In this document: positions 38,924 to 60,656 of the stretch, one piece after another | Layout of the letters: each line of letters opens with the position of its first letter | Numbering within the stretch: position 1 is the first letter of the stretch | The notes under the pieces: generated by a model | Database searches by the model: none | Seen by the model: only the letters and a program-made list of their open reading frames with translations | Told to the model about the DNA's origin: nothing | Translations under genes and position numbers: made by a program | IMG/VR virus record: IMGVR_UViG_3300024239_000011 | Location: 310,001 to 374,000 of that record | DNA: 64,000 nucleotides | Strand: one strand, 5' to 3'

Positions 38924-39370
38924 ATGTCGAAATTCATTCCATCATTGATTGTTACGTTGTTAGTGTCGTCACCGTCCTACGGTCTGGACATTTCGGGGAA
39001 AATTACAGTTTTGGGGGAATGCCAAGCGACATATGCGCAATTGGTCATGATTTCCAATCTAACTGCCGGTTTCTTAACCATGTCTAATGCACCATCCGAA
39101 CAGGTACTCGGTTTTGCGCGTATTGGGCAGCACGCATTGGATGGGTTTGATCAAGCCGACGCAGAAGCCGAACGAATCATTGGAAATGCATCACCAAAGG
39201 ATCGAATTCGGCTTGATGTGATTAATAATCAAACTTTTCAAGAAACCACCAAGACGTGGGAAGAATTAAAAGTGTCGCTTACCACCGGGGCGTCCACCGC
39301 AACAATGTTCATGAAAAATTTGGTGGAAAAATCAAATCAGTGTGATGGTATATTGTCACAGATCGACTAA
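38924..39370 (+). CDS. Putative secreted protein
   Basis: Signal-peptide-like N-terminus; ATAAATA upstream. Confidence 0.55.
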   Translation: MSKFIPSLIVTLLVSSPSYGLDISGKITVLGECQATYAQLVMISNLTAGFLTMSNAPSEQVLGFARIGQHALDGFDQADAEAERIIGNASPKDRIRLDVINNQTFQETTKTWEELKVSLTTGASTATMFMKNLVEKSNQCDGILSQID

Positions 39371-40308
39371 GCGATATTCGCTCTGAGGCAATCATGAATA
39401 TGAATTACACCCATCACCTGATCGGCATCTACCACAATCAAGCTCGTAATGGTACGATCTGTCATCAGCTTCAGAGCATCCACCGCAAATGTATCAGGGG
39501 ACACCGTTTTAGGGTTCCGGGTCATGAAAACATCCACAGGCGTAGTCAACGGAACATGATCGATATTTCGACGGATATCCCCATCCGTGACTAGCCCTAA
39601 TAGCGTATTATCGTCATCCACCACAACCGCACACCCAAGTGCTTTTTTTCCAATGACGAGAATGGCGTCCTTCATCGTCGCGTGAATACACACTAAAGGC
39701 ATTGCTGGTCCTTGATGCATGATCTGCTTGACCAACAGCAATTCCCGCCCAAGCTTTCCACCGGGATGATAATGACCAAATTCTCGTTCGGTCAGTGTCT
39801 CGCTGTAAAGTGCCACTGCCAGCGCATCACCCAATGCTAACGACATCGTGGTTGAGGTCGTTGGTACCAATCCAAGTGGACATGCTTCGCGTTTTGGGAG
39901 GGTTAAAACGACCGTAGCTGCTGCGCCGATGGTGCTACTGGGGTTGGAAGTGATTACTACCACGGGTATCGCCCGGCGCCGACAGTAGTGCATTAGGTTG
40001 AACATTTCCCCGGTTTCGCCGGAATTCGAAATCCCAATGACCGCATCGCCCGGTTGGATCATCCCCATATCACCGTGGTTCGCCTCGGCGGGATGAACGA
40101 AGACCGCCGGTTTCCCTACTGATGATAATGTGGCCGCAATCTTACGGGCAATATGCCCGCTTTTGCCCATACCGGTAACGATTATTCGCCCACTCACTCC
40201 GGTAAGAACTTCACAGGCAGAAGTAAACCTTCCATCAAGGGTATTCGCCAGTTCTTGAATACCATCAGCTTCTTCTTTTAGTGTACGCTTTGCAATGTCG
40301 ATATACAT
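39367..40308 (-). CDS. kpsF: KpsF/GutQ arabinose-5-phosphate isomerase (SIS plus 2 CBS)
   Basis: VTGMGKSGHIARK, HPAEANHGDMG, SNSGET, PTTSTT, HPGGKLG, CBS pair. GAGGTG RBS before MYIDI. Confidence 0.93.
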   Translation of the reverse strand: MYIDIAKRTLKEEADGIQELANTLDGRFTSACEVLTGVSGRIIVTGMGKSGHIARKIAATLSSVGKPAVFVHPAEANHGDMGMIQPGDAVIGISNSGETGEMFNLMHYCRRRAIPVVVITSNPSSTIGAAATVVLTLPKREACPLGLVPTTSTTMSLALGDALAVALYSETLTEREFGHYHPGGKLGRELLLVKQIMHQGPAMPLVCIHATMKDAILVIGKKALGCAVVVDDDNTLLGLVTDGDIRRNIDHVPLTTPVDVFMTRNPKTVSPDTFAVDALKLMTDRTITSLIVVDADQVMGVIHIHDCLRANIA

Positions 40309-40348
40309 ATATTTCACCTCAATACATGAACATATACATACTGCTGAC

Positions 40349-40377
40349 TTGACATGCGGACAATTATTTTCTATACT
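40349..40377 (+). promoter_or_regulatory. Sigma70-type promoter
   Basis: TTGACA-17-TATACT. Confidence 0.7.
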
Positions 40378-40402
40378 GGTTAAAGTCAAGGAGAAAATCC
40401 CC

Positions 40403-40621
40403 ATGCGTTCAATTACCAAAGCCGACGTGGAACACTATTACGGCGGGATGGTTATGACGATGGCACGTTCGTTGGCAACCAAACCGTGGGATGATTTGAC
40501 TTTTAGATCGCGTCAGCGGCTTTTGAACAAAGCAGTAAAAGCACTTCATGCCATGCTCAATAACAAAGAGTGCGTGAGTGCATTGTTCACGTTTACCAGG
40601 GATCGTCTTACCAATAAGTAG
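40403..40621 (+). CDS. Hypothetical protein
   Basis: Has a promoter, AAGGAG RBS and downstream hairpin. Confidence 0.6.
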   Translation: MRSITKADVEHYYGGMVMTMARSLATKPWDDLTFRSRQRLLNKAVKALHAMLNNKECVSALFTFTRDRLTNK

Positions 40622-42497: not shown

Positions 42498-42884
42498 TTA
42501 CAGCGAGCTAAAACGCTTGGTGATGTGATGTATGTCAGACCGGCGTGCGGGACCGATACCCAGCGCGGTGATGATGGGGTTGCCATCAAAATGCGGGGGT
42601 AGGATATGACCGCTATCGGTGATGAGGGCGCAGGGCAGCCCAGCCCGTTCCGCTTCTTCCTTGGCGCGGAGAAGCTGGTTCAGGTTCTTGGCTTTCAAAA
42701 CACATTTCGTTCCGTGCCGATCCCCCAAATATTCAGTCGCATGACTTGGGGTTTCCGCGTGGGCTTTGAGGAACGTATCAAGAAAAGCATGTCCGCATTG
42801 CGCAGCAGCTTTGCCCGGCGGCATATCAAGATCGCCGCGAATAATGGCATACAATCGAAGGGTGGGATCAGGAATCTACGACAT
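42498..42884 (-). CDS. Peptidyl-tRNA hydrolase, PTH2 type, with in-frame TAG at codon 3
   Basis: LYAIIRGDLDMPPGKAAAQCGHA..KCVLKA..ITDSG..TALGIGP. GGAG RBS then ATG TCG TAG ATT CCT GAT. Confidence 0.85.
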
Positions 42885-42965
42885 GGTACATACTCCAAGT
42901 TCTTAGGGTTTAGACATAAGTTCTTTGCTTTTAGATAAATAATTTATCAGGCAAGGAACTACTCA

Positions 42966-43646
42966 ATGTACGATACGTCAGAACACTATTTTGTGTATAT
43001 TTTGCTTAATCCGTTAAAAGACTATCTTCCATTTTACGTTGGTAAAGGGTCGCGGAACCGCATAAAAGAACATCTTTGGGAGACAGCAGAAACAACGTCG
43101 AATCGCCACAAATTCAATACTGTAAAGAAAATCCTCGCTTCCGGATTTGATGAAATACCATTCGTTAAATGGATCGACGGTATTGACGAAGAAACTGCAT
43201 ATAGAATTGAAGAAGTTTTAATTCGATGGTATGGGCGACGGGTAGACGGGGGGATTTTAACGAACTTGTCATTATCGCAACGCCCGCCGTCACGTTTTGG
43301 TATGACACACTCAGATGAAACTAAATGTCTTATATCCAAAAACCGCAAGGGGAAAGGACGAGGTTCCCCGTCAGCAGAACACCGTCGTAAAATTGCAGTC
43401 GCTTTGAAGGGGAAACCTAAATCGCCCGAAACAATCGAAAAACGACGCGAGACGATGAAGGCAAAATCAGAGGAAGAGATTGAAAACATGCGCACCAAAA
43501 TGCGACATGCTCGTTCCGAACAAATTTTCACAGCCGAATCCAACCGCAAACGCGCATTGGCGAATACGGGGAAAAAACGGTCTGAAGAAACAAAACGGAA
43601 AATTTCGGAAGCACTAAAACGGCGACATGCGGAAATGCCAACCTGA
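42966..43646 (+). mobile_element. Free-standing GIY-YIG-like homing endonuclease with NUMOD3 repeats
   Basis: YFVYILL..PFYVGKG..RIKEH; repeats HSDETK, KSPET, RSEETKRKISEAL. Preceded by late promoter ATAAATA in hairpin 42919-42960. Confidence 0.85.
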
Positions 43647-43654
43647 ATTGTGCA

Positions 43655-43795
43655 GTGCCCGGCTTGTGATGCTGTCTTTCCACTACTCATGTCAAGGTCG
43701 CCACGAGCAATGGCGTAGAGACGCAGGGTGGGATCGCCACCCAGATTAGGGATCGAAGTAGAAATCTACGTGTCAGCGGCACTGATATGGGTCAT
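43655..43795 (-). pseudogene. Orphaned 5' fragment of pth
   Basis: GGAGG RBS, then MTHISAADT*ISTSIPNLGGDPTLRLYAIARGDLDMSSGKTASQAGH, which breaks off at the endonuclease 3' end. Confidence 0.8.
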
Positions 43796-43847
43796 AGGAA
43801 CCTCCGGTTTTCGATAATCCTATTTATAAACACCTGAGTTATGGGTG

Positions 43848-44213
43848 TCAATAGATTTTTTCTTCTTTCCGGTACCATTCCAGTTTAAAGCGGGCAGCCT
43901 CAAGTTTTTTCTCGAAACGAAAAGTCAATGTAATGCTTCGGTCCTTGTTTTCATCGACCGACACATAGGACCGCCCTCGGGTGTTCTTCCGCAGCCAGTC
44001 CTTCATGATTGAAATGTCTTCGCGGTAGCCAATTCCGGCTTTAATTCGGACGACGTACTTGCACGTCTTGTATATTTCTTCCGTTATCTCGTGTGGAGTT
44101 TTCTGTTCCGCAAGGATATTCCCTTTGGTTTTGACAACCAACACGATGAAAGAGAACAGAATAATCACATAACCAATTGCGAACAAAGGTCCGGTAAACG
44201 AATCCAGCCACAT
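43848..44213 (-). CDS. Membrane-anchored hypothetical protein (F..A..FKL.W family)
   Basis: N-terminal TM helix; FRFEKKLEAARFKLEW. Confidence 0.6.
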   Translation of the reverse strand: MWLDSFTGPLFAIGYVIILFSFIVLVVKTKGNILAEQKTPHEITEEIYKTCKYVVRIKAGIGYREDISIMKDWLRKNTRGRSYVSVDENKDRSITLTFRFEKKLEAARFKLEWYRKEEKIY

Positions 44214-44263: not shown

Positions 44264-46681
44264 TTACGCCTCTGCCATCTTCTGGATGGTCGCATAGTCG
44301 GTCTTGCCGGTGCCCAGCAACGGGATGGCATCGACCACCTTGATCACCGCCGGAACCGACAGGGCACTGATGCCCTTACTCTTGGCATCTTCCGCCAAGG
44401 CAGCGCGGTTCGCATCCGGATTGGTCGTGAAGAGGACCAACTGTTCGCCCTTCTTCTCGTCCTTGATAGCGACCACGGCGTGCTGGTGTTGTACCCACAG
44501 CGCCGATACCTGGGTTTCGACGGCGGTCAACGACACCATTTCGCCCGCGATCTTGGCGAACCGCTTGGCACGCCCGCGAATGGTGATGAAACCCTGATCG
44601 TCCAGGCTCACCATGTCGCCGGTATCATACCAGCCATCCTCGGGCTGCTGGATGACGCCGGGGTTGTCCGCCTTGAGATAACCCAGCATGACGTTCGGAC
44701 CCCGGACGATCAGGCGGAAAGCATCCTCGACGCCGGGCACCGTGACCAACTTGTAGTCGATCAGGGGCATCAGGCGCCCAACAGTCCCGGAGCGATAGTG
44801 CATCGGGGTGTTGGTGGCGATGACAGGGGCGCATTCGGTCGCGCCGTAGCCCTCGTAGATCGCCCGCTGGAACTTCTCCATGTAGAGCGCGCGAGTGCTG
44901 TCCTTGACCTTCTCAGCGCCCGCAAAGATGTAGCGGATGCTGCGGAAATCATAGGGGTGCGCTTGCTTGGCGTAGCCGTTCAGGAACGTGTCCGTACCAA
45001 ACATGATGGTCACGTTGCGGTCATAGACCAGTTCCGGGATGACTTTGTAGTTCAAAGGGTTCGGGAACAGGAACACCTTGATGCCATTCAGGAACGGCAA
45101 TAGCGTGCCCGCCGTCAGACCAAAGCTGTGGAACATGGGCAGAGCGTTCAGTACGATGTCCTGCGGCGAGAAATCGACCGAGGCAGCCAACTGGTACATG
45201 TTGGATAGCAGGTTCTTGTGCGACAGTACGACGCCCTTCGGGACGCCCTCCGACCCACTGGTGAAAATCACAACCGCCGGGGTATGCGCGGTCAGGTCTT
45301 CGCTGTCATGCAGACTATACGGGGGACGTGTTGCATCATAGTGAATCGCACGGGCATCGGTATAGTCCAAGAATTTACCACGCAACTTGGCGATCAGCCC
45401 GATATTAGCACCGATATCTTCGAGGTAGACCACGTTGACGCCATTCAGTGAATCGTTCTCACCGTTTTCCAACCCCTTGATCACGTCCTGAAGCTTCGCC
45501 TGTTCAACGAAGAACCGGCTGGTGATCACGGTCTTGATCTCCGCTGCTCGGATTGACGCCTGAATATTGCGCAACCCGGTACTGAAATTCAACATGGCGG
45601 GCACACGACCGAACGCCTGAAGGGCAAAGAACGTTACGGCAGTCTTGATGCTGTTGGGCAGCAAAACACCGATAAATTCACCCTGGTTGGTAAACTGGCT
45701 CAATTGACGACCTAGAACCAGTGTCCCCACAATGAAATTCTTGTAGGTTATCGCGGTGATTTCCTTGGTCGTAGGGTCGATGTTTTCCGCAATCACGGTC
45801 TTTTCGCCGTAGGATGCCGATGCATCAAGCAAACCTTCATACAACGTTTGATCAGCACGATCAGTGGCAGCCATCATGGCAACCATTTCATCGTACAGCC
45901 AATTACCAATGGCAATGCGGCGGGTTTTGCCACGCATCGGTACATGACCCGTACCATCACACCGCTCGCATAGGCGACGGTTGTCACCCGGATACAAACC
46001 AGATGCAAAAATGATATCACCGTCGCCATCGCATACAGGGCATTGCTGCTGCCCGATATTGACCTTACGGGGCGGAAGCATGGTCATTTCGAACGGATGC
46101 CCATAATGTACTGGGTTCCGCCCGCGCAGCCGCGACAATGGCGTGAAATGGACACCTTCCAGACGGATGGGGACAATGTTGGCATCCGCTTTATCCGCGA
46201 TCATACCGGGACCGTCGTAAACCTTCATCAGACCATTGGTGACAGTCAATCGTCCCTCTGGAAAAATCACAACCGGCTTGCCGTCCTTAACCAGATTGAC
46301 GAGCGCCTTGATCGCCATTGGGTTGCGTGTGTCGAGGGTCACACAGTTGAAAAACGGCATAACCAATTGCATCCACCACCACTTCGACGCACCAAGATTA
46401 ACGGCGAACGTCGGGTTCCCCGGAATGTAGGTGGCGAGGATGGCAGCATCCACGAAGCTGACATGATTGGCGATATAGATGACGCGATCCCCGGCGAGTT
46501 TGGCGTTTTCCAGCCCCTTCACCGTGATGTTGTTGTGCAGAGCAAAGACAATACGCAAACCCAGACGAACAAAAGGACCGCCGATTTTCTTCAGCACGGC
46601 AAACCACATGTCGATCATACACCGCAACATGTGGTCGATCATCCAGTTATAGACAGTGTTTTTAATCTCACGATCAGTCAT
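44264..46681 (-). CDS. aas: Bifunctional acyltransferase / acyl-ACP synthetase (Aas-like)
   Basis: PlsC motifs ANHVSFVD and IFPEGR; AMP-binding FTSGSEGVPKG, YEGYGATE, WYDTGD, GKTDY. Confidence 0.92.
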   Translation of the reverse strand: MTDREIKNTVYNWMIDHMLRCMIDMWFAVLKKIGGPFVRLGLRIVFALHNNITVKGLENAKLAGDRVIYIANHVSFVDAAILATYIPGNPTFAVNLGASKWWWMQLVMPFFNCVTLDTRNPMAIKALVNLVKDGKPVVIFPEGRLTVTNGLMKVYDGPGMIADKADANIVPIRLEGVHFTPLSRLRGRNPVHYGHPFEMTMLPPRKVNIGQQQCPVCDGDGDIIFASGLYPGDNRRLCERCDGTGHVPMRGKTRRIAIGNWLYDEMVAMMAATDRADQTLYEGLLDASASYGEKTVIAENIDPTTKEITAITYKNFIVGTLVLGRQLSQFTNQGEFIGVLLPNSIKTAVTFFALQAFGRVPAMLNFSTGLRNIQASIRAAEIKTVITSRFFVEQAKLQDVIKGLENGENDSLNGVNVVYLEDIGANIGLIAKLRGKFLDYTDARAIHYDATRPPYSLHDSEDLTAHTPAVVIFTSGSEGVPKGVVLSHKNLLSNMYQLAASVDFSPQDIVLNALPMFHSFGLTAGTLLPFLNGIKVFLFPNPLNYKVIPELVYDRNVTIMFGTDTFLNGYAKQAHPYDFRSIRYIFAGAEKVKDSTRALYMEKFQRAIYEGYGATECAPVIATNTPMHYRSGTVGRLMPLIDYKLVTVPGVEDAFRLIVRGPNVMLGYLKADNPGVIQQPEDGWYDTGDMVSLDDQGFITIRGRAKRFAKIAGEMVSLTAVETQVSALWVQHQHAVVAIKDEKKGEQLVLFTTNPDANRAALAEDAKSKGISALSVPAVIKVVDAIPLLGTGKTDYATIQKMAEA

Positions 46682-46871
46682 GAAGGCAATCCTGCGGCAG
46701 GTTAAGAGGTGAGTTTTAACGAACACCATCCCAACTAGCAAGACCTTAAATATGGCTTTTGCACTTGTTCCTATGGTAAATAAGGTTCGCCGCTGATGCT
46801 CAAACCACACCATAGGCAGGGCATGGTGGCACCCTCACAACCTCCAAACTACACCAAGCAGGAGAGAGTTT

Positions 46872-59363: not shown

Positions 59364-60656
59364 TTAAGACCCACCGTTCGACGGGATATATGGCACAGTA
59401 GTCCCAAACGGAGCTTCAATCTTGCTTCCCTTGTTATTAATAATGAACAAGGTGTCGCAGAAATAAGGATCACCCCATCCTTTATTTGGCAATCCATCAG
59501 TAAACATGACGAACTGCTCTGGTACCATATCCATTCGACGCATAAATTCCCAATTTGCCTCGAATCGGGTACCACCACCACCTTTCACCCATTGATAATC
59601 GAACATCGTGTCAGCGTTGTCCGGGGTGAAAATGTGATAGCTGTCCTTGTAGACTTTGGTGTCAAACGACCAGATATGGATTTTGTAGTCCGGGAACTGA
59701 TCCATAATTCCTTTCGTTTCCGTCAGAAAATCACGAATCATTTCCTCGGTAATACTAGCAGATGCATCAATACCAACGTGGATTTCAATAGTGTCCTCGT
59801 AGATCATACCGGGAAGAATGATTCCGAGGTGAGCGCACTTACGGCTTGGCTTGGTGTAGCTGTAATCCTCTTTGACAAGGCTCTGTACTGTGCGATTGAG
59901 CATTTGGCGCCAGTCAAGCTGCGGATCAGCGATATCCGCAATTAGGCGTCGTAAAGACGCCGGGACAGCACCAGCCCCGACCACCTGAGCCGCATTGATC
60001 ATGGCGTTCCGTATTTCGTTGCGGACTTGCTGCAACTCTTCCTCGGACATTTCCGGCGGACCATTACCGTCGCCTTGGATACGAACCTTGACTTTCTTCT
60101 GCCCACTTCCGGTATCGGCGCCTAGGTCAAGATGCATGTCCATCGTCATTTCGACTTCAACGCCACGCTTCTTCAGGTCTTCATAAACCTGCTCGGACGA
60201 CCACGGCTCGGGGAACATGAACCGTTCATCGTACAGCCCGACGCGCTGGACCTTACCATCCTTGTCCTTGCTGTCCTTGTCCTTGACCCGCAATTTCTCG
60301 CGAACCGGCATGCTTCCGATGTCTTCCTTCATCAGCATGCCGTTCACAACGTAATCGTTGGCGTTGTTCCACAGCCCCGGATCACGTTCGCCCCGCCGCC
60401 CGAAGTGGTCGAGAATGCAATGCCCGACCTCATGTACCAATACGAACACAAGTTCAGGCTTGGTCAGTGACGCCACAAATTCCGGATTGTAATAGAGTTT
60501 GCGGAAATCGGTTGCCATGGTGGGGCACCAATCACTCGCTTCCTCAAGCTCCATATGGGAAATGATGTTCCCAAAGAACGTGTGCTTGAAAAGCAGATGC
60601 GTCTTGGCAAACACAATCTGTTTTTCAATCTCATCCTTGAACAAATTCGAAGTCAT
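59364..60656 (-). CDS. DUF2201-type metallopeptidase plus VWA-like protein
   Basis: TMATD, HEVGH, WNNANDYVVN; VWA IDASAS, FDT, GGGTRF, FTDG. Confidence 0.88.
   Translation of the reverse strand: MTSNLFKDEIEKQIVFAKTHLLFKHTFFGNIISHMELEEASDWCPTMATDFRKLYYNPEFVASLTKPELVFVLVHEVGHCILDHFGRRGERDPGLWNNANDYVVNGMLMKEDIGSMPVREKLRVKDKDSKDKDGKVQRVGLYDERFMFPEPWSSEQVYEDLKKRGVEVEMTMDMHLDLGADTGSGQKKVKVRIQGDGNGPPEMSEEELQQVRNEIRNAMINAAQVVGAGAVPASLRRLIADIADPQLDWRQMLNRTVQSLVKEDYSYTKPSRKCAHLGIILPGMIYEDTIEIHVGIDASASITEEMIRDFLTETKGIMDQFPDYKIHIWSFDTKVYKDSYHIFTPDNADTMFDYQWVKGGGGTRFEANWEFMRRMDMVPEQFVMFTDGLPNKGWGDPYFCDTLFIINNKGSKIEAPFGTTVPYIPSNGGS

What the first reader, a model, noticed from the sequence alone, without database searches (positions are those of the whole stretch)
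42855..43795. In-frame amber codon conserved in both copies of the peptidyl-tRNA hydrolase 5' end
Seen: the functional copy reads GGAG-8 nt-ATG TCG TAG ATT CCT GAT CCC ACC CTT CGA TTG TAT (TAG at 42876-42878). The orphan copy reads GGAGG-5 nt-ATG ACC CAT ATC AGT GCC GCT GAC ACG TAG ATT ... GAT CCC ACC CTG CGT CTC TAC (TAG at 43766-43768). The leaders differ in length and sequence, yet both keep an in-frame stop in the same CG-TAG-ATT context, and DPTLRLY is conserved after it. The TTG that could restart copy 1 is CTC in copy 2. TAG is a normal stop elsewhere in the window. Inference: programmed readthrough makes Pth only when UAG termination fails or a suppressor tRNA is present, a feedback analogous to prfB. 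Alternatively the upstream minigene senses peptidyl-tRNA drop-off, as with lambda bar minigenes.
Basis: partly seen in the sequence, partly recalled or inferred. Interest (0 to 1): 0.76.

Follow-up and report, generated by a model that had tools for sequence, protein, structure and literature searches.

The report
Amber-gated peptidyl-tRNA hydrolase of huge phages
A 543-kb phage carries a stop codon two codons into its peptidyl-tRNA hydrolase gene; some fifty related huge phages share this feature and encode a suppressor tRNA that matches the stop, usually right next to the gene, but no such tRNA was found in this phage.

Summary
On the minus strand, a full PTH2-family gene (42498-42884) and a 5' fragment of a second allele (43655-43795) each start with Shine-Dalgarno, ATG, a few codons and an in-frame TAG. 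The fragment is a relic of a GIY-YIG homing endonuclease insertion (42966-43646).

The TAG is not chance, an assembly error or genome-wide recoding. In 57 other distinct related loci the same layout recurs: a 1-8 codon leader, an in-frame stop, a coding linker, then Pth2. The stop is TAG in 52, TGA in 4 and TAA in 1. The base after the stop is a purine in 57 of all 59 leaders.

The stop's identity co-varies with a phage-encoded suppressor tRNA: CUA, UCA or UUA. This tRNA sits on the same strand, often 12-100 nt upstream. It is absent next to 17 uninterrupted Pth2 genes.

The prfB-like feedback and bar-minigene sensing are not.

This genome is the exception. No suppressor tRNA was found in its 543 kb, so here the gene is either silent, leaky, or restarted at the downstream TTG.

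The papers I found on three cultured jumbo phages report a suppressor tRNA without an identified target. None of the papers found links one to pth.

The parts
42498..42875 (-). Pth2 reading frame after the TAG: 7-codon linker (IPDPTLR), then the PTH2 domain, with the stop codon at 42498-42500. Gene callers start it at TTG 42854-42852 (118 aa).
   Evidence: PF01981 E 1.6e-23, profile 2-113/115. Matches solved archaeal Pth2 2zv3 at E 6.6e-15, whose residue 2 aligns to the R of TLRLY. All invariant columns of a 32-sequence alignment are present.
42876..42896 (-). Leader of copy 1: GGAG (42896-42893), 8 nt, ATG (42884-42882), TCG, in-frame TAG (42878-42876), followed by A at +4.
   Evidence: Read directly. 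The same layout occurs in 57 other distinct loci. Identical in independent assemblies.
42966..43646 (+). GIY-YIG / NUMOD3 homing endonuclease gene (226 aa) on the opposite strand, between the two pth 5' ends.
   Evidence: NUMOD3 PF07460 38.5 bits (cut-off 20.4), LEM-3-like GIY-YIG PF22945 28.7 bits (cut-off 27), GIY-YIG PF01541 19.8 bits (below 22.6). A 45%-identical paralog lies at genome 53447-53821.
43655..43768 (-). Copy 2 after its TAG (43768-43766): 15-codon linker plus the first 21 codons of a diverged Pth2 domain. Homology ends after the His codon of the QxGH motif at 43655, 8 nt from the endonuclease stop codon.
   Evidence: Over the 27 shared codons, 9 are identical, 12 differ synonymously and 6 non-synonymously. 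PF01981 profile 2-25 only. Alignment A1.
43769..43851 (-). Copy 2 promoter-like site and leader: TTGACA 43851-43846, 17 nt, TATAAA 43828-43823, GGAGG 43805-43801, ATG 43795-43793, and 9 codons before the TAG.
   Evidence: Read directly. The scan tool does not call the promoter because its rule needs T at position 6 of the second hexamer. Relatives show similar TTGAC-type sites upstream of their leaders.

Best explanation
The TAG is an inherited, programmed feature of a clade of huge-phage Pth2 genes. Translation starts at a normal SD-ATG, meets a stop after 1-8 codons, and continues into the hydrolase only when the phage's own suppressor tRNA reads that stop. That tRNA has an anticodon matching the stop and usually lies on the same strand beside the gene. 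Synthesis of the hydrolase is thus gated by suppressor tRNA activity.

Shown: the stop is conserved, one coding frame runs across it, the tRNA is linked to the gene, and stop and anticodon co-vary. Inferred: actual readthrough, the amino acid inserted, and the purpose. My guess at the purpose is that it ties the supply of Pth2 to the time and level of phage tRNA or suppressor activity.

In this window two such alleles lie side by side. A GIY-YIG homing endonuclease cassette, which brought its neighbouring pth 5' end with it, entered the resident gene just after the QxGH codons. That left the resident promoter, leader, TAG and first 21 domain codons as a relic (copy 2), upstream of an intact gene (copy 1).

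No suppressor tRNA was detected in this genome. Copy 1 is therefore an orphaned gated gene. Most likely it is made only at a low level, by near-cognate readthrough or by restart at the TTG 21 nt past the stop, or not at all.
For: Conserved stop. 59 distinct leaders, counting the two here, have an in-frame stop 2-40 codons before the domain: TAG 54, TGA 4, TAA 1. An in-frame ATG lies within 12 codons upstream in 51, and 43 of these have an SD-like site.

One translated frame. In 8 related phages the 45 nt upstream are variable at 41 sites. The 7-codon leader varies at 4 third, 2 first and 1 second codon positions. The 23-codon linker varies at 16 third, 6 first and 5 second positions. In the first 59 sequences tabulated, which include a few later set aside, 50 have no ATG, GTG or TTG in the linker.

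Context. The base after the stop is a purine in 57 of 59, against about half at ordinary TAG stops (Fisher 2e-11). From established E. coli work, a purine there favours nonsense suppression.

tRNA linkage. Of 52 distinct interrupted loci, 26 have a stop-matching suppressor tRNA within 1.5 kb. All are on the same strand, 12-1181 nt upstream or 343-458 nt downstream of the stop, and none mismatches. Another 19 have one elsewhere on the contig. The 7 without are contigs rated 6-79% complete. None of 17 uninterrupted Pth2 loci has one (Fisher 9e-5).

Co-variation. TGA goes with UCA in Agrobacterium phage Atu_ph07, L015, L016 and L169. TAA goes with UUA in L054. TAG goes with CUA elsewhere, including Sinorhizobium phage Phosso. 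The switches occur inside subclades.

Nearest relatives. L205 (66% identity) and L206 (64%) have a CUA tRNA 20-50 nt upstream of an ATG-X-TAG leader.

Relic.
Against: No CUA, UCA or UUA tRNA was found in the window's 543-kb record. I tried ARAGORN at several thresholds, Infernal RF00005, two motif scans, and BLAST with 41 relatives' suppressors. The mechanism therefore cannot operate here as it does in relatives, unless the record is incomplete or the tRNA comes from elsewhere.

There is no protein or ribosome-profiling evidence anywhere.

TAG ends 17% of long ORFs here and 22% in Phosso. An efficient suppressor would extend many phage proteins, so suppression must be partial or context-dependent.

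The codon after the stop is ATT, ATC, GTT, GTG, GTA or CTG in 35 of 59 leaders. Restart at that codon is therefore not excluded. Eight leaders lack an obvious ATG. The loci are phylogenetically related, so the counts overstate independent events. The purpose of the gating is inference only.
Confidence: 0.7

Rival explanations
1. Termination and restart. The leader is a real mini-ORF that loads ribosomes. After release at the stop, the ribosome restarts at the adjacent near-cognate codon, or in this window at the TTG 21 nt downstream. The hydrolase is then made without any readthrough.
For: 35 of 59 codons after the stop are ATT, ATC, GTT, GTG, GTA or CTG. Three of the four TGA leaders have GTG right after the stop. 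Copy 1 has a TTG seven codons after the TAG and no suppressor tRNA in the genome. Gene callers use that TTG.
Against: This does not explain why the stop's identity tracks the anticodon of a neighbouring tRNA. It does not explain why TAA, the commonest stop, is nearly absent. It does not explain why the leader peptide is conserved in the same frame. 24 of 59 codons after the stop (GAA, GAT, AAC, ACT and others) cannot start translation. At the TTG position, start-capable codons are no commoner than Leu codon usage predicts: 7 TTG among 33 Leu codons, against 23% genome-wide. There is no SD before the TTG.
Confidence: 0.12
2. One reading: no suppressor is needed. Natural leaky termination at UAG makes Pth2 in proportion to failure of release factor 1, a feedback like prfB. 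Alternatively the two-codon minigene senses peptidyl-tRNA drop-off as lambda bar does.
For: UAG and UGA, each read by a single release factor, are strongly preferred over UAA. Copy 1's leader has the form of a bar minigene: SD, AUG, one sense codon, stop. This genome has no suppressor tRNA and no release factor gene.
Against: In relatives a cognate suppressor tRNA is linked to the gene and co-varies with the stop. That would be unnecessary under pure release-factor sensing. Pth2 has no known action on stop-codon recognition, so there is no closed loop as in prfB. There is no frameshift site or stimulatory structure (z-scores +1.3 and -0.6). Leaders range from 2 to 9 codons and are translated in frame with the enzyme.
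Confidence: 0.08
3. Decay. Having lost its suppressor tRNA, this phage's pth is a dead gene on its way to erosion, and the two TAGs are merely inherited.
For: No suppressor tRNA in the genome. A homing endonuclease has invaded the locus. One population variant changes the conserved D of the DPTLR motif.
Against: The 125-codon frame after the TAG is intact, with every invariant family residue. The endonuclease event left a complete gene with its own SD-ATG leader. This is not really a rival for why the TAG exists, only for whether it still works here.
Confidence: 0.08
4. The phage uses an alternative genetic code in which TAG is a sense codon throughout (code 15 type).
For: Other large phages do this with suppressor tRNAs (bioRxiv 10.1101/2021.08.26.457843).
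Against: TAG ends 114 of 658 long ORFs. Reading TAG as sense adds no more ORF length than reading TAA as sense. A genome-wide scan finds no other convincing gene with a leader stop, here or in Phosso. No CUA tRNA is present.
Confidence: 0.01

Closest known systems
Stop-codon recoding in phages with phage-encoded suppressor tRNAs (crAss-like, Lak, Agate, Jade; Borges et al., bioRxiv 10.1101/2021.08.26.457843)
   Same: A phage-encoded suppressor tRNA whose anticodon matches in-frame stops in phage genes. The proposed use is as a translational gate that opens once the phage's tRNAs are expressed.
   Different: There, many late genes carry many recoded stops and the recoded codon is depleted as a terminator. 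Here a single gene carries usually one stop in a short N-terminal leader, and the rest of the genome uses that codon as an ordinary stop (17-22% of long ORFs). The tRNA gene sits next to its one evident target. The target is a translation-rescue enzyme, not a lysis or structural gene.
prfB (release factor 2) autoregulatory recoding
   Same: An early in-frame stop in a translation-factor gene that must be bypassed to make the protein.
   Different: prfB uses a +1 frameshift at a slippery site with an internal SD, and its product reads the very stop that gates it. Here the frame is unchanged, no such signals exist, and the gate is opened by a separate tRNA gene.
Lambda bar minigenes
   Same: Copy 1's leader has the same form: SD, AUG, one sense codon, stop. 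There is also a thematic link to peptidyl-tRNA hydrolase.
   Different: bar minigenes are stand-alone and act by sequestering tRNA through drop-off. Here the sequence after the stop is an in-frame enzyme under coding constraint, and leader lengths vary from 2 to 9 codons.
ArfA synthesis controlled by tmRNA
   Same: In logic only: a ribosome-rescue factor whose own synthesis depends on an abnormal termination event.
   Different: ArfA is made from a truncated non-stop mRNA when tmRNA fails. No mRNA cleavage or tagging is implied here.
Free-standing GIY-YIG homing endonucleases of T4-like phages (Seg, Mob)
   Same: A GIY-YIG plus NUMOD3 endonuclease gene sits beside or inside a conserved phage gene, with diverged flanking sequence as expected from co-conversion.
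   Different: The insertion left a tandem partial duplication of the target's 5' end, so the gene stays whole without splicing. The cleavage site and homing were not tested.

Membership tests
PTH2 peptidyl-tRNA hydrolase (PF01981) | Full-length match to the family profile above the curated cut-off | tested here: met
   83.6 bits against a cut-off of 23, profile 2-113 of 115; 82.8 bits in the six-frame genome search.
PTH2 peptidyl-tRNA hydrolase (PF01981) | Sequence relationship to solved Pth2 structures and conservation of family-invariant residues | tested here: met
   2zv3 E 6.6e-15, 1rzw, 1wn2, 1q7s, 1xty. The invariant columns of alignment A2 (including the GK..Q.GHA block and the D and H further on) are all present.
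PTH2 peptidyl-tRNA hydrolase (PF01981) | Hydrolysis of peptidyl-tRNA | not testable with these tools
   Needs an enzyme assay.
Suppressor-tRNA-dependent in-frame stop (programmed nonsense suppression) | In-frame stop conserved among homologs | tested here: met
   59 distinct leaders: 54 TAG, 4 TGA, 1 TAA.
Suppressor-tRNA-dependent in-frame stop (programmed nonsense suppression) | Coding constraint in one frame on both sides of the stop, without an alternative start | tested here: met
   Third-position-biased variation in leader and linker against a saturated upstream region. The two window copies differ by 12 synonymous and 6 non-synonymous codons. 50 of the first 59 sequences tabulated have no canonical start in the linker.
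Suppressor-tRNA-dependent in-frame stop (programmed nonsense suppression) | Cognate suppressor tRNA encoded in the same genome | tested here: not met
   Not met for the window's genome. Met in relatives: 45 of 52 contigs, every record rated at least 90% complete, and the cultured phages Atu_ph07 and Phosso.
Suppressor-tRNA-dependent in-frame stop (programmed nonsense suppression) | Full-length protein containing an amino acid at the stop position | not testable with these tools
   Needs mass spectrometry or reporter assays.
prfB-type autoregulatory recoding | Frameshift site with an internal SD, and a gene product that acts on the gating stop | tested here: not met
   The frame is unchanged across the stop. 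There is no structure beyond shuffled controls. Pth2 is not known to act on stop recognition (established knowledge).
Lambda bar-type minigene | SD, AUG, one or two sense codons, then a stop | tested here: met
   Copy 1 reads GGAG, 8 nt, ATG TCG TAG. Sixteen leaders in the family have this two-codon form.
Lambda bar-type minigene | Stand-alone element acting through drop-off and toxic when Pth is limiting | tested here: not met
   The stand-alone criterion fails: the stop is followed by an in-frame conserved enzyme. Toxicity is not testable here.
Genome-wide TAG reassignment (code 15) | TAG depleted as a terminator and present in frame in many genes | tested here: not met
   TAG ends 17% of long ORFs and gives no special gain when read as sense. 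No other leader-stop genes were found.
GIY-YIG homing endonuclease | GIY-YIG catalytic domain plus a NUMOD-type DNA-binding module | tested here: met
   PF22945 at 28.7 bits (cut-off 27) and PF07460 at 38.5 bits (cut-off 20.4). The generic PF01541 is below its cut-off (19.8 against 22.6).
GIY-YIG homing endonuclease | Cleavage of the endonuclease-free allele and homing | not testable with these tools
   No endonuclease-free allele of this phage was found; both other assemblies carry it. No close relatives of the endonuclease turned up in the viral contig scan.

The most novel reading that the evidence does not exclude
Huge phages that otherwise use the standard code carry a dedicated two-part translational switch. 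One part is a suppressor tRNA gene. Beside it is a Pth2 gene whose short leader ends in the matching stop, so the ribosome-rescue enzyme is made only when, and as much as, the phage's suppressor tRNA is active. This would give the suppressor tRNAs of these jumbo phages a first concrete, conserved target. It would also be the smallest known case of phage stop-codon recoding (one codon in one gene) and a possible starting point for wider recoding. The window's phage would be a natural 'tRNA-less' state of the switch.
Probability: 0.6. Interest if true: 0.85.

Novelty: new variant of a known kind. Interest (0 to 1): 0.8.

Why it matters
Three papers on cultured jumbo phages report a suppressor tRNA without a target. 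[quoted passage not shown] For Agrobacterium phage Atu_ph07 (PMC6102473) and Ralstonia phage RsoM2USA (PMC8504454) the papers only note that many stops could be affected.

The present comparison points to one conserved target, pth2. It also explains why GenBank records of Atu_ph07 and Phosso annotate that gene from an internal Met.

The result links two translation-related gene classes of huge phages, tRNAs and Pth2, into one regulatory unit. It offers a natural, compact tRNA-and-leader switch. It gives a one-gene example of the recoding that in other phages spans whole late regions.

Two of the phages are cultured, so the idea can be tested directly.

For annotation pipelines the lesson is that a conserved early stop next to a suppressor tRNA should not be treated as a truncated gene.

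Tried and rejected
Genome-wide recoding was rejected on stop usage and ORF statistics.

Sequencing or assembly error was rejected using independent assemblies and runs.

A hidden suppressor tRNA in this genome was sought in several ways. I ran ARAGORN at default and relaxed thresholds, with and without introns. I ran Infernal with the Rfam tRNA model over the whole genome and all Rfam families around the locus. I scanned for anticodon-loop plus T-loop motifs. I ran BLAST with 41 relatives' suppressor tRNAs. I then read by eye every Infernal hit that ARAGORN had missed, including three tRNAs with 39-44 nt insertions and two truncated tRNA-like remnants. None can carry CUA. A low-threshold 'tRNA-Stop(tta)' call at window 59913-59987 has a poor cloverleaf and no Infernal support, so I dismissed it.

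A wider set of leader-stop genes was sought here and in Phosso. The hits other than pth were gene junctions or antisense frames.

A readthrough-stimulating RNA structure was not found.

A conserved internal start at the TTG position was rejected on codon counts.

The amino-acid identity of the suppressors could not be inferred from similarity to other tRNAs.

Close relatives of the endonuclease were not found in viral contigs (the first attempt failed because the machine was busy). No endonuclease-free allele was found.

The 'RNA' runs that hold part of the locus are flagged as probably DNA and only show presence.
Full report
WHAT IS THERE. The window is bases 310001-374000 of a 543,035-bp virus record (48.7% G+C, rated complete) with 66-68 tRNA genes.

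The finding lies on the minus strand. Reading 5' to 3' on that strand, the features are as follows:
- a TTGACA-17-TATAAA promoter-like site (43851-43823);
- GGAGG, 5 nt, then ATG at 43795;
- eight further codons and TAG at 43768-43766;
- a 15-codon linker and the first 21 codons of a PTH2 domain, ending after the His codon of the QxGH motif at 43655;
- the antisense of a 226-aa GIY-YIG/NUMOD3 homing endonuclease gene, which is encoded on the plus strand at 42966-43646;
- GGAG, 8 nt, ATG at 42884, TCG, and TAG at 42878-42876;
- a 7-codon linker and a complete PTH2 domain ending at 42498.

NOT AN ARTEFACT, NOT A CODE CHANGE. Two assemblies from other samples are 100% and 99.95% identical over 1900 nt and carry both TAGs. 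So do contigs of public runs. TAG ends 114 of 658 ORFs of 150 aa or more. Treating TAG as sense adds no more ORF length than treating TAA as sense. A genome-wide scan for 'SD-ATG, up to 12 codons, stop, long frame' finds only the two pth copies as convincing cases.

WHY THERE ARE TWO COPIES. The copies share 27 codons, from DPT to GH. Of these, 9 are identical, 12 differ synonymously and 6 non-synonymously. They therefore come from two diverged, functional alleles and are not a recent in-place duplication. Similarity also covers the SD and ATG region, with 5-, 14- and 24-nt length differences.

Homology of copy 2 stops 8 nt from the endonuclease stop codon, inside the most conserved motif of the enzyme. 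I read this as a homing-type event. A cassette made of the endonuclease gene plus the adjoining pth 5' end of a donor phage replaced the region downstream of a break in the resident gene. The resident promoter, leader and first codons were left as a relic. The breakpoint is shown; the mechanism is inferred. The genome has a second endonuclease of this kind, 45% identical. No insertion-free allele was found.

Yes. Two scans of viral contigs returned 80 loci. In those at 39-62% identity, the frame upstream of the domain reads Met, 1-8 residues, stop, a 2-40 residue linker, then Pth2. Four more loci fetched through protein hits show the same.

After removing duplicates and five ambiguous or conventional loci, there are 59 distinct leaders, counting the two here. 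TAG occurs in 54, TGA in 4 and TAA in 1. An in-frame ATG lies within 12 codons in 51, with an SD-like site in 43.

More distant Pth2 genes (37% identity or less) and one closer subfamily (L170) start at an ordinary ATG with no stop.

GenBank records of two cultured members annotate the gene only from the internal Met. These are Agrobacterium phage Atu_ph07 and Sinorhizobium phage Phosso. The annotation leaves a gap of about 190-230 nt that holds the leader.

THE STOP IS INSIDE A TRANSLATED FRAME. In eight related phages the 45 nt upstream of the ATG vary at 41 positions. The leader peptide (M-L/I-T-N-S-F-L) and the linker are conserved across the TAG. The variation is concentrated at third codon positions. 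The counts at third, first and second positions are 4, 2 and 1 in the leader, and 16, 6 and 5 in the linker. The first 30 codons of the domain give 16, 3 and 2. In one search's first tabulation of 59 sequences, 50 have no ATG, GTG or TTG in the linker. Uninterrupted homologs contain the same DPTLR-type motif as part of the protein.

THE PARTNER. ARAGORN on the fetched loci finds a tRNA whose anticodon matches the stop within 1.5 kb in 26 of 52 distinct interrupted loci. It is always on the same strand. Its 3' end lies 12-1181 nt upstream of the stop, or it lies 343-458 nt downstream. No mismatching suppressor tRNA was found nearby. A pattern search of the parent contigs, followed by ARAGORN, finds a matching suppressor tRNA in 19 more. 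The seven without are contigs rated 6-79% complete. Every record rated at least 90% complete has one. None of 17 uninterrupted Pth2 loci has any suppressor tRNA nearby, even one that sits in a nine-tRNA array (Fisher 9e-5).

CO-VARIATION. The four TGA leaders (Atu_ph07, L015, L016, L169) go with tRNA-UCA. The single TAA leader (L054) goes with an adjacent tRNA-UUA. Phosso (TAG) has two tRNA-CUA, one of them 4.6 kb upstream of pth.

The switches lie inside subclades. L014 (TAG/CUA) and L169 (TGA/UCA) have closely similar linkers. Phosso (TAG/CUA) and Atu_ph07 (TGA/UCA) belong to one subclade. The UUA tRNA of L054 is 71% identical to the CUA tRNA of its relative L047. The UCA tRNA of L016's genome is 78% identical to a CUA tRNA of L012's genome.

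This is the codon-anticodon equivalent of compensatory change. It is the main reason I hold that the stop is read by the phage tRNA.

The base after the stop is a purine in 57 of 59 leaders, against 49-56% at ordinary TAG stops. From classical E. coli genetics, a purine there favours suppression over release.

WHAT IT IS NOT. There is no RNA structure beyond shuffled controls around either leader. There is no frameshift site. This genome has no release-factor gene. Phosso, which carries suppressor tRNAs, uses TAG to end 22% of its long ORFs, and pth is its only convincing leader-stop gene. The tRNA and the leader therefore look like a dedicated pair in a standard-code genome. Suppression must be partial or context-dependent.

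THE WINDOW'S OWN GENOME IS THE ODD ONE OUT. Its two nearest relatives with DNA (66% and 64% identity) have a CUA tRNA 20-50 nt upstream of an ATG-X-TAG leader. Here no CUA, UCA or UUA tRNA was found by any method. There is only one pth2 gene plus the fragment.

Three states are possible, and I cannot separate them:
- low-level readthrough by near-cognate tRNAs (the phage encodes Gln-CUG, Tyr, Lys-CUU, Trp and Leu-CAA tRNAs);
- restart at the TTG 21 nt after the TAG, which has no SD and whose codon is no more than expected from Leu codon usage;
- a silent gene.

In a genome without a suppressor tRNA, the relic copy 2 would yield only a nine-residue peptide. With suppression it would run on into a 243-codon frame, most of it antisense to the endonuclease gene.

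HOW IT LIKELY WORKS, AND HOW SURE I AM.
- Shown: conservation of the stop, one coding frame across it, physical linkage and anticodon co-variation of the tRNA, and context bias.
- Inferred, with my probability: the tRNA reads the stop in relatives (about 0.85); this genome lacks the tRNA (about 0.8); copy 2 is a relic of an endonuclease insertion (about 0.8).
- Speculative (about 0.35): the gate ties Pth2 supply to the moment and level of phage tRNA or suppressor activity. That could compensate for extra stalled or rescued ribosomes when stops are read through. It could also simply delay the enzyme until the phage's tRNAs have accumulated, as proposed for late genes of recoded phages.

LITERATURE. 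Pth2 in jumbo phages is known (PMC7824862, PMC3622015). Suppressor tRNAs are reported in XacN1, Atu_ph07, RsoM2USA and AP-J-162 with no identified target; in AP-J-162 the tRNA is labelled 'Pyl'. Six full-text searches found no paper that connects the two. The library lacks most subscription journals, so priority cannot be excluded.

VERDICT. This is a new variant of a known kind, namely phage stop-codon suppression reduced to one gene with an adjacent dedicated tRNA. Interest is high. The local puzzle of the missing tRNA is unresolved.

Noticed in passing
window 42966-43646 (+); paralog outside the window at genome 53447-53821 (-): A GIY-YIG/NUMOD3 homing endonuclease is inserted in pth on the opposite strand. 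It has a 45%-identical paralog elsewhere in the genome. The insertion kept the host gene whole by leaving a tandem partial duplication of its 5' end.
   Followed up: partly
outside the window: genome 79179-79289 (-), 80141-80252 (-), 100668-100784 (+): Three tRNA genes found by Infernal carry 39-44 nt hairpin insertions in or beside the anticodon loop. These are far shorter than group I introns. Their anticodons are ambiguous (Val or Gly; Ala or Thr; Ile), and none can be CUA.
   Followed up: partly
outside the window: genome 96422-96505 (-) and 96860-96940 (-): Two paralogous tRNA-like genes have odd D and anticodon arms and long variable regions. ARAGORN gives one a four-base anticodon 'ctta'. 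Infernal scores them at 26-29 bits.
   Followed up: no
outside the window: genome 84144-84207 (-) and 19838-19899 (-): Two truncated tRNA-like remnants. One lacks the 3' half of its T arm (loop CTCCTAA). The other lacks a pairing acceptor stem. Whether either is a decayed suppressor tRNA could not be decided.
   Followed up: partly
L060:1395-1480, L047:1391-1480, L051:1384-1480: In some relatives the suppressor tRNA ends only 12-18 nt before the in-frame stop. In L060 the leader's SD (AGGAG) lies inside the 3' strand of the tRNA acceptor stem, and the ATG starts 3 nt after CCA. In L047 there is no start codon between the tRNA and the TAG. tRNA processing and leader translation may be coupled.
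   Followed up: no
L020:895-1244: A phage-encoded tmRNA gene (tag ADALPMAA) lies directly upstream of a TAG-interrupted pth2. This is a second ribosome-rescue function at the same locus.
   Followed up: no
L050, L063 (about 1435-1500); L054 (1411-1480): L050 and L063 have two in-frame stops before the Pth2 domain. L054 has a second in-frame stop about 20 codons further upstream.
   Followed up: no
L083:1343-1530 (Atu_ph07, MF403008) and L084:1302-1530 (Phosso, PV764938): The GenBank CDS for pth2 starts at the internal Met of the DLxM motif in both cultured phages. The SD-ATG leader, the stop and the linker are left unannotated.
   Followed up: yes
window 44264-46813 (-) and 39367-40419 (-): The phage carries host-like metabolic genes next to the locus. 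One is an acyltransferase fused to an AMP-binding acyl-ACP-synthetase-like domain (PF01553 + PF00501). The other is a SIS+CBS sugar-phosphate-isomerase-like gene (PF01380 + PF00571).
   Followed up: no
window 43034-43690 (-): A 218-codon ATG-started ORF runs antisense through the endonuclease gene, in frame with copy 2. The frame is open for 243 codons from copy 2's TAG. It is probably an accident of the antisense frame, but it would be translated if copy 2's TAG were suppressed.
   Followed up: no
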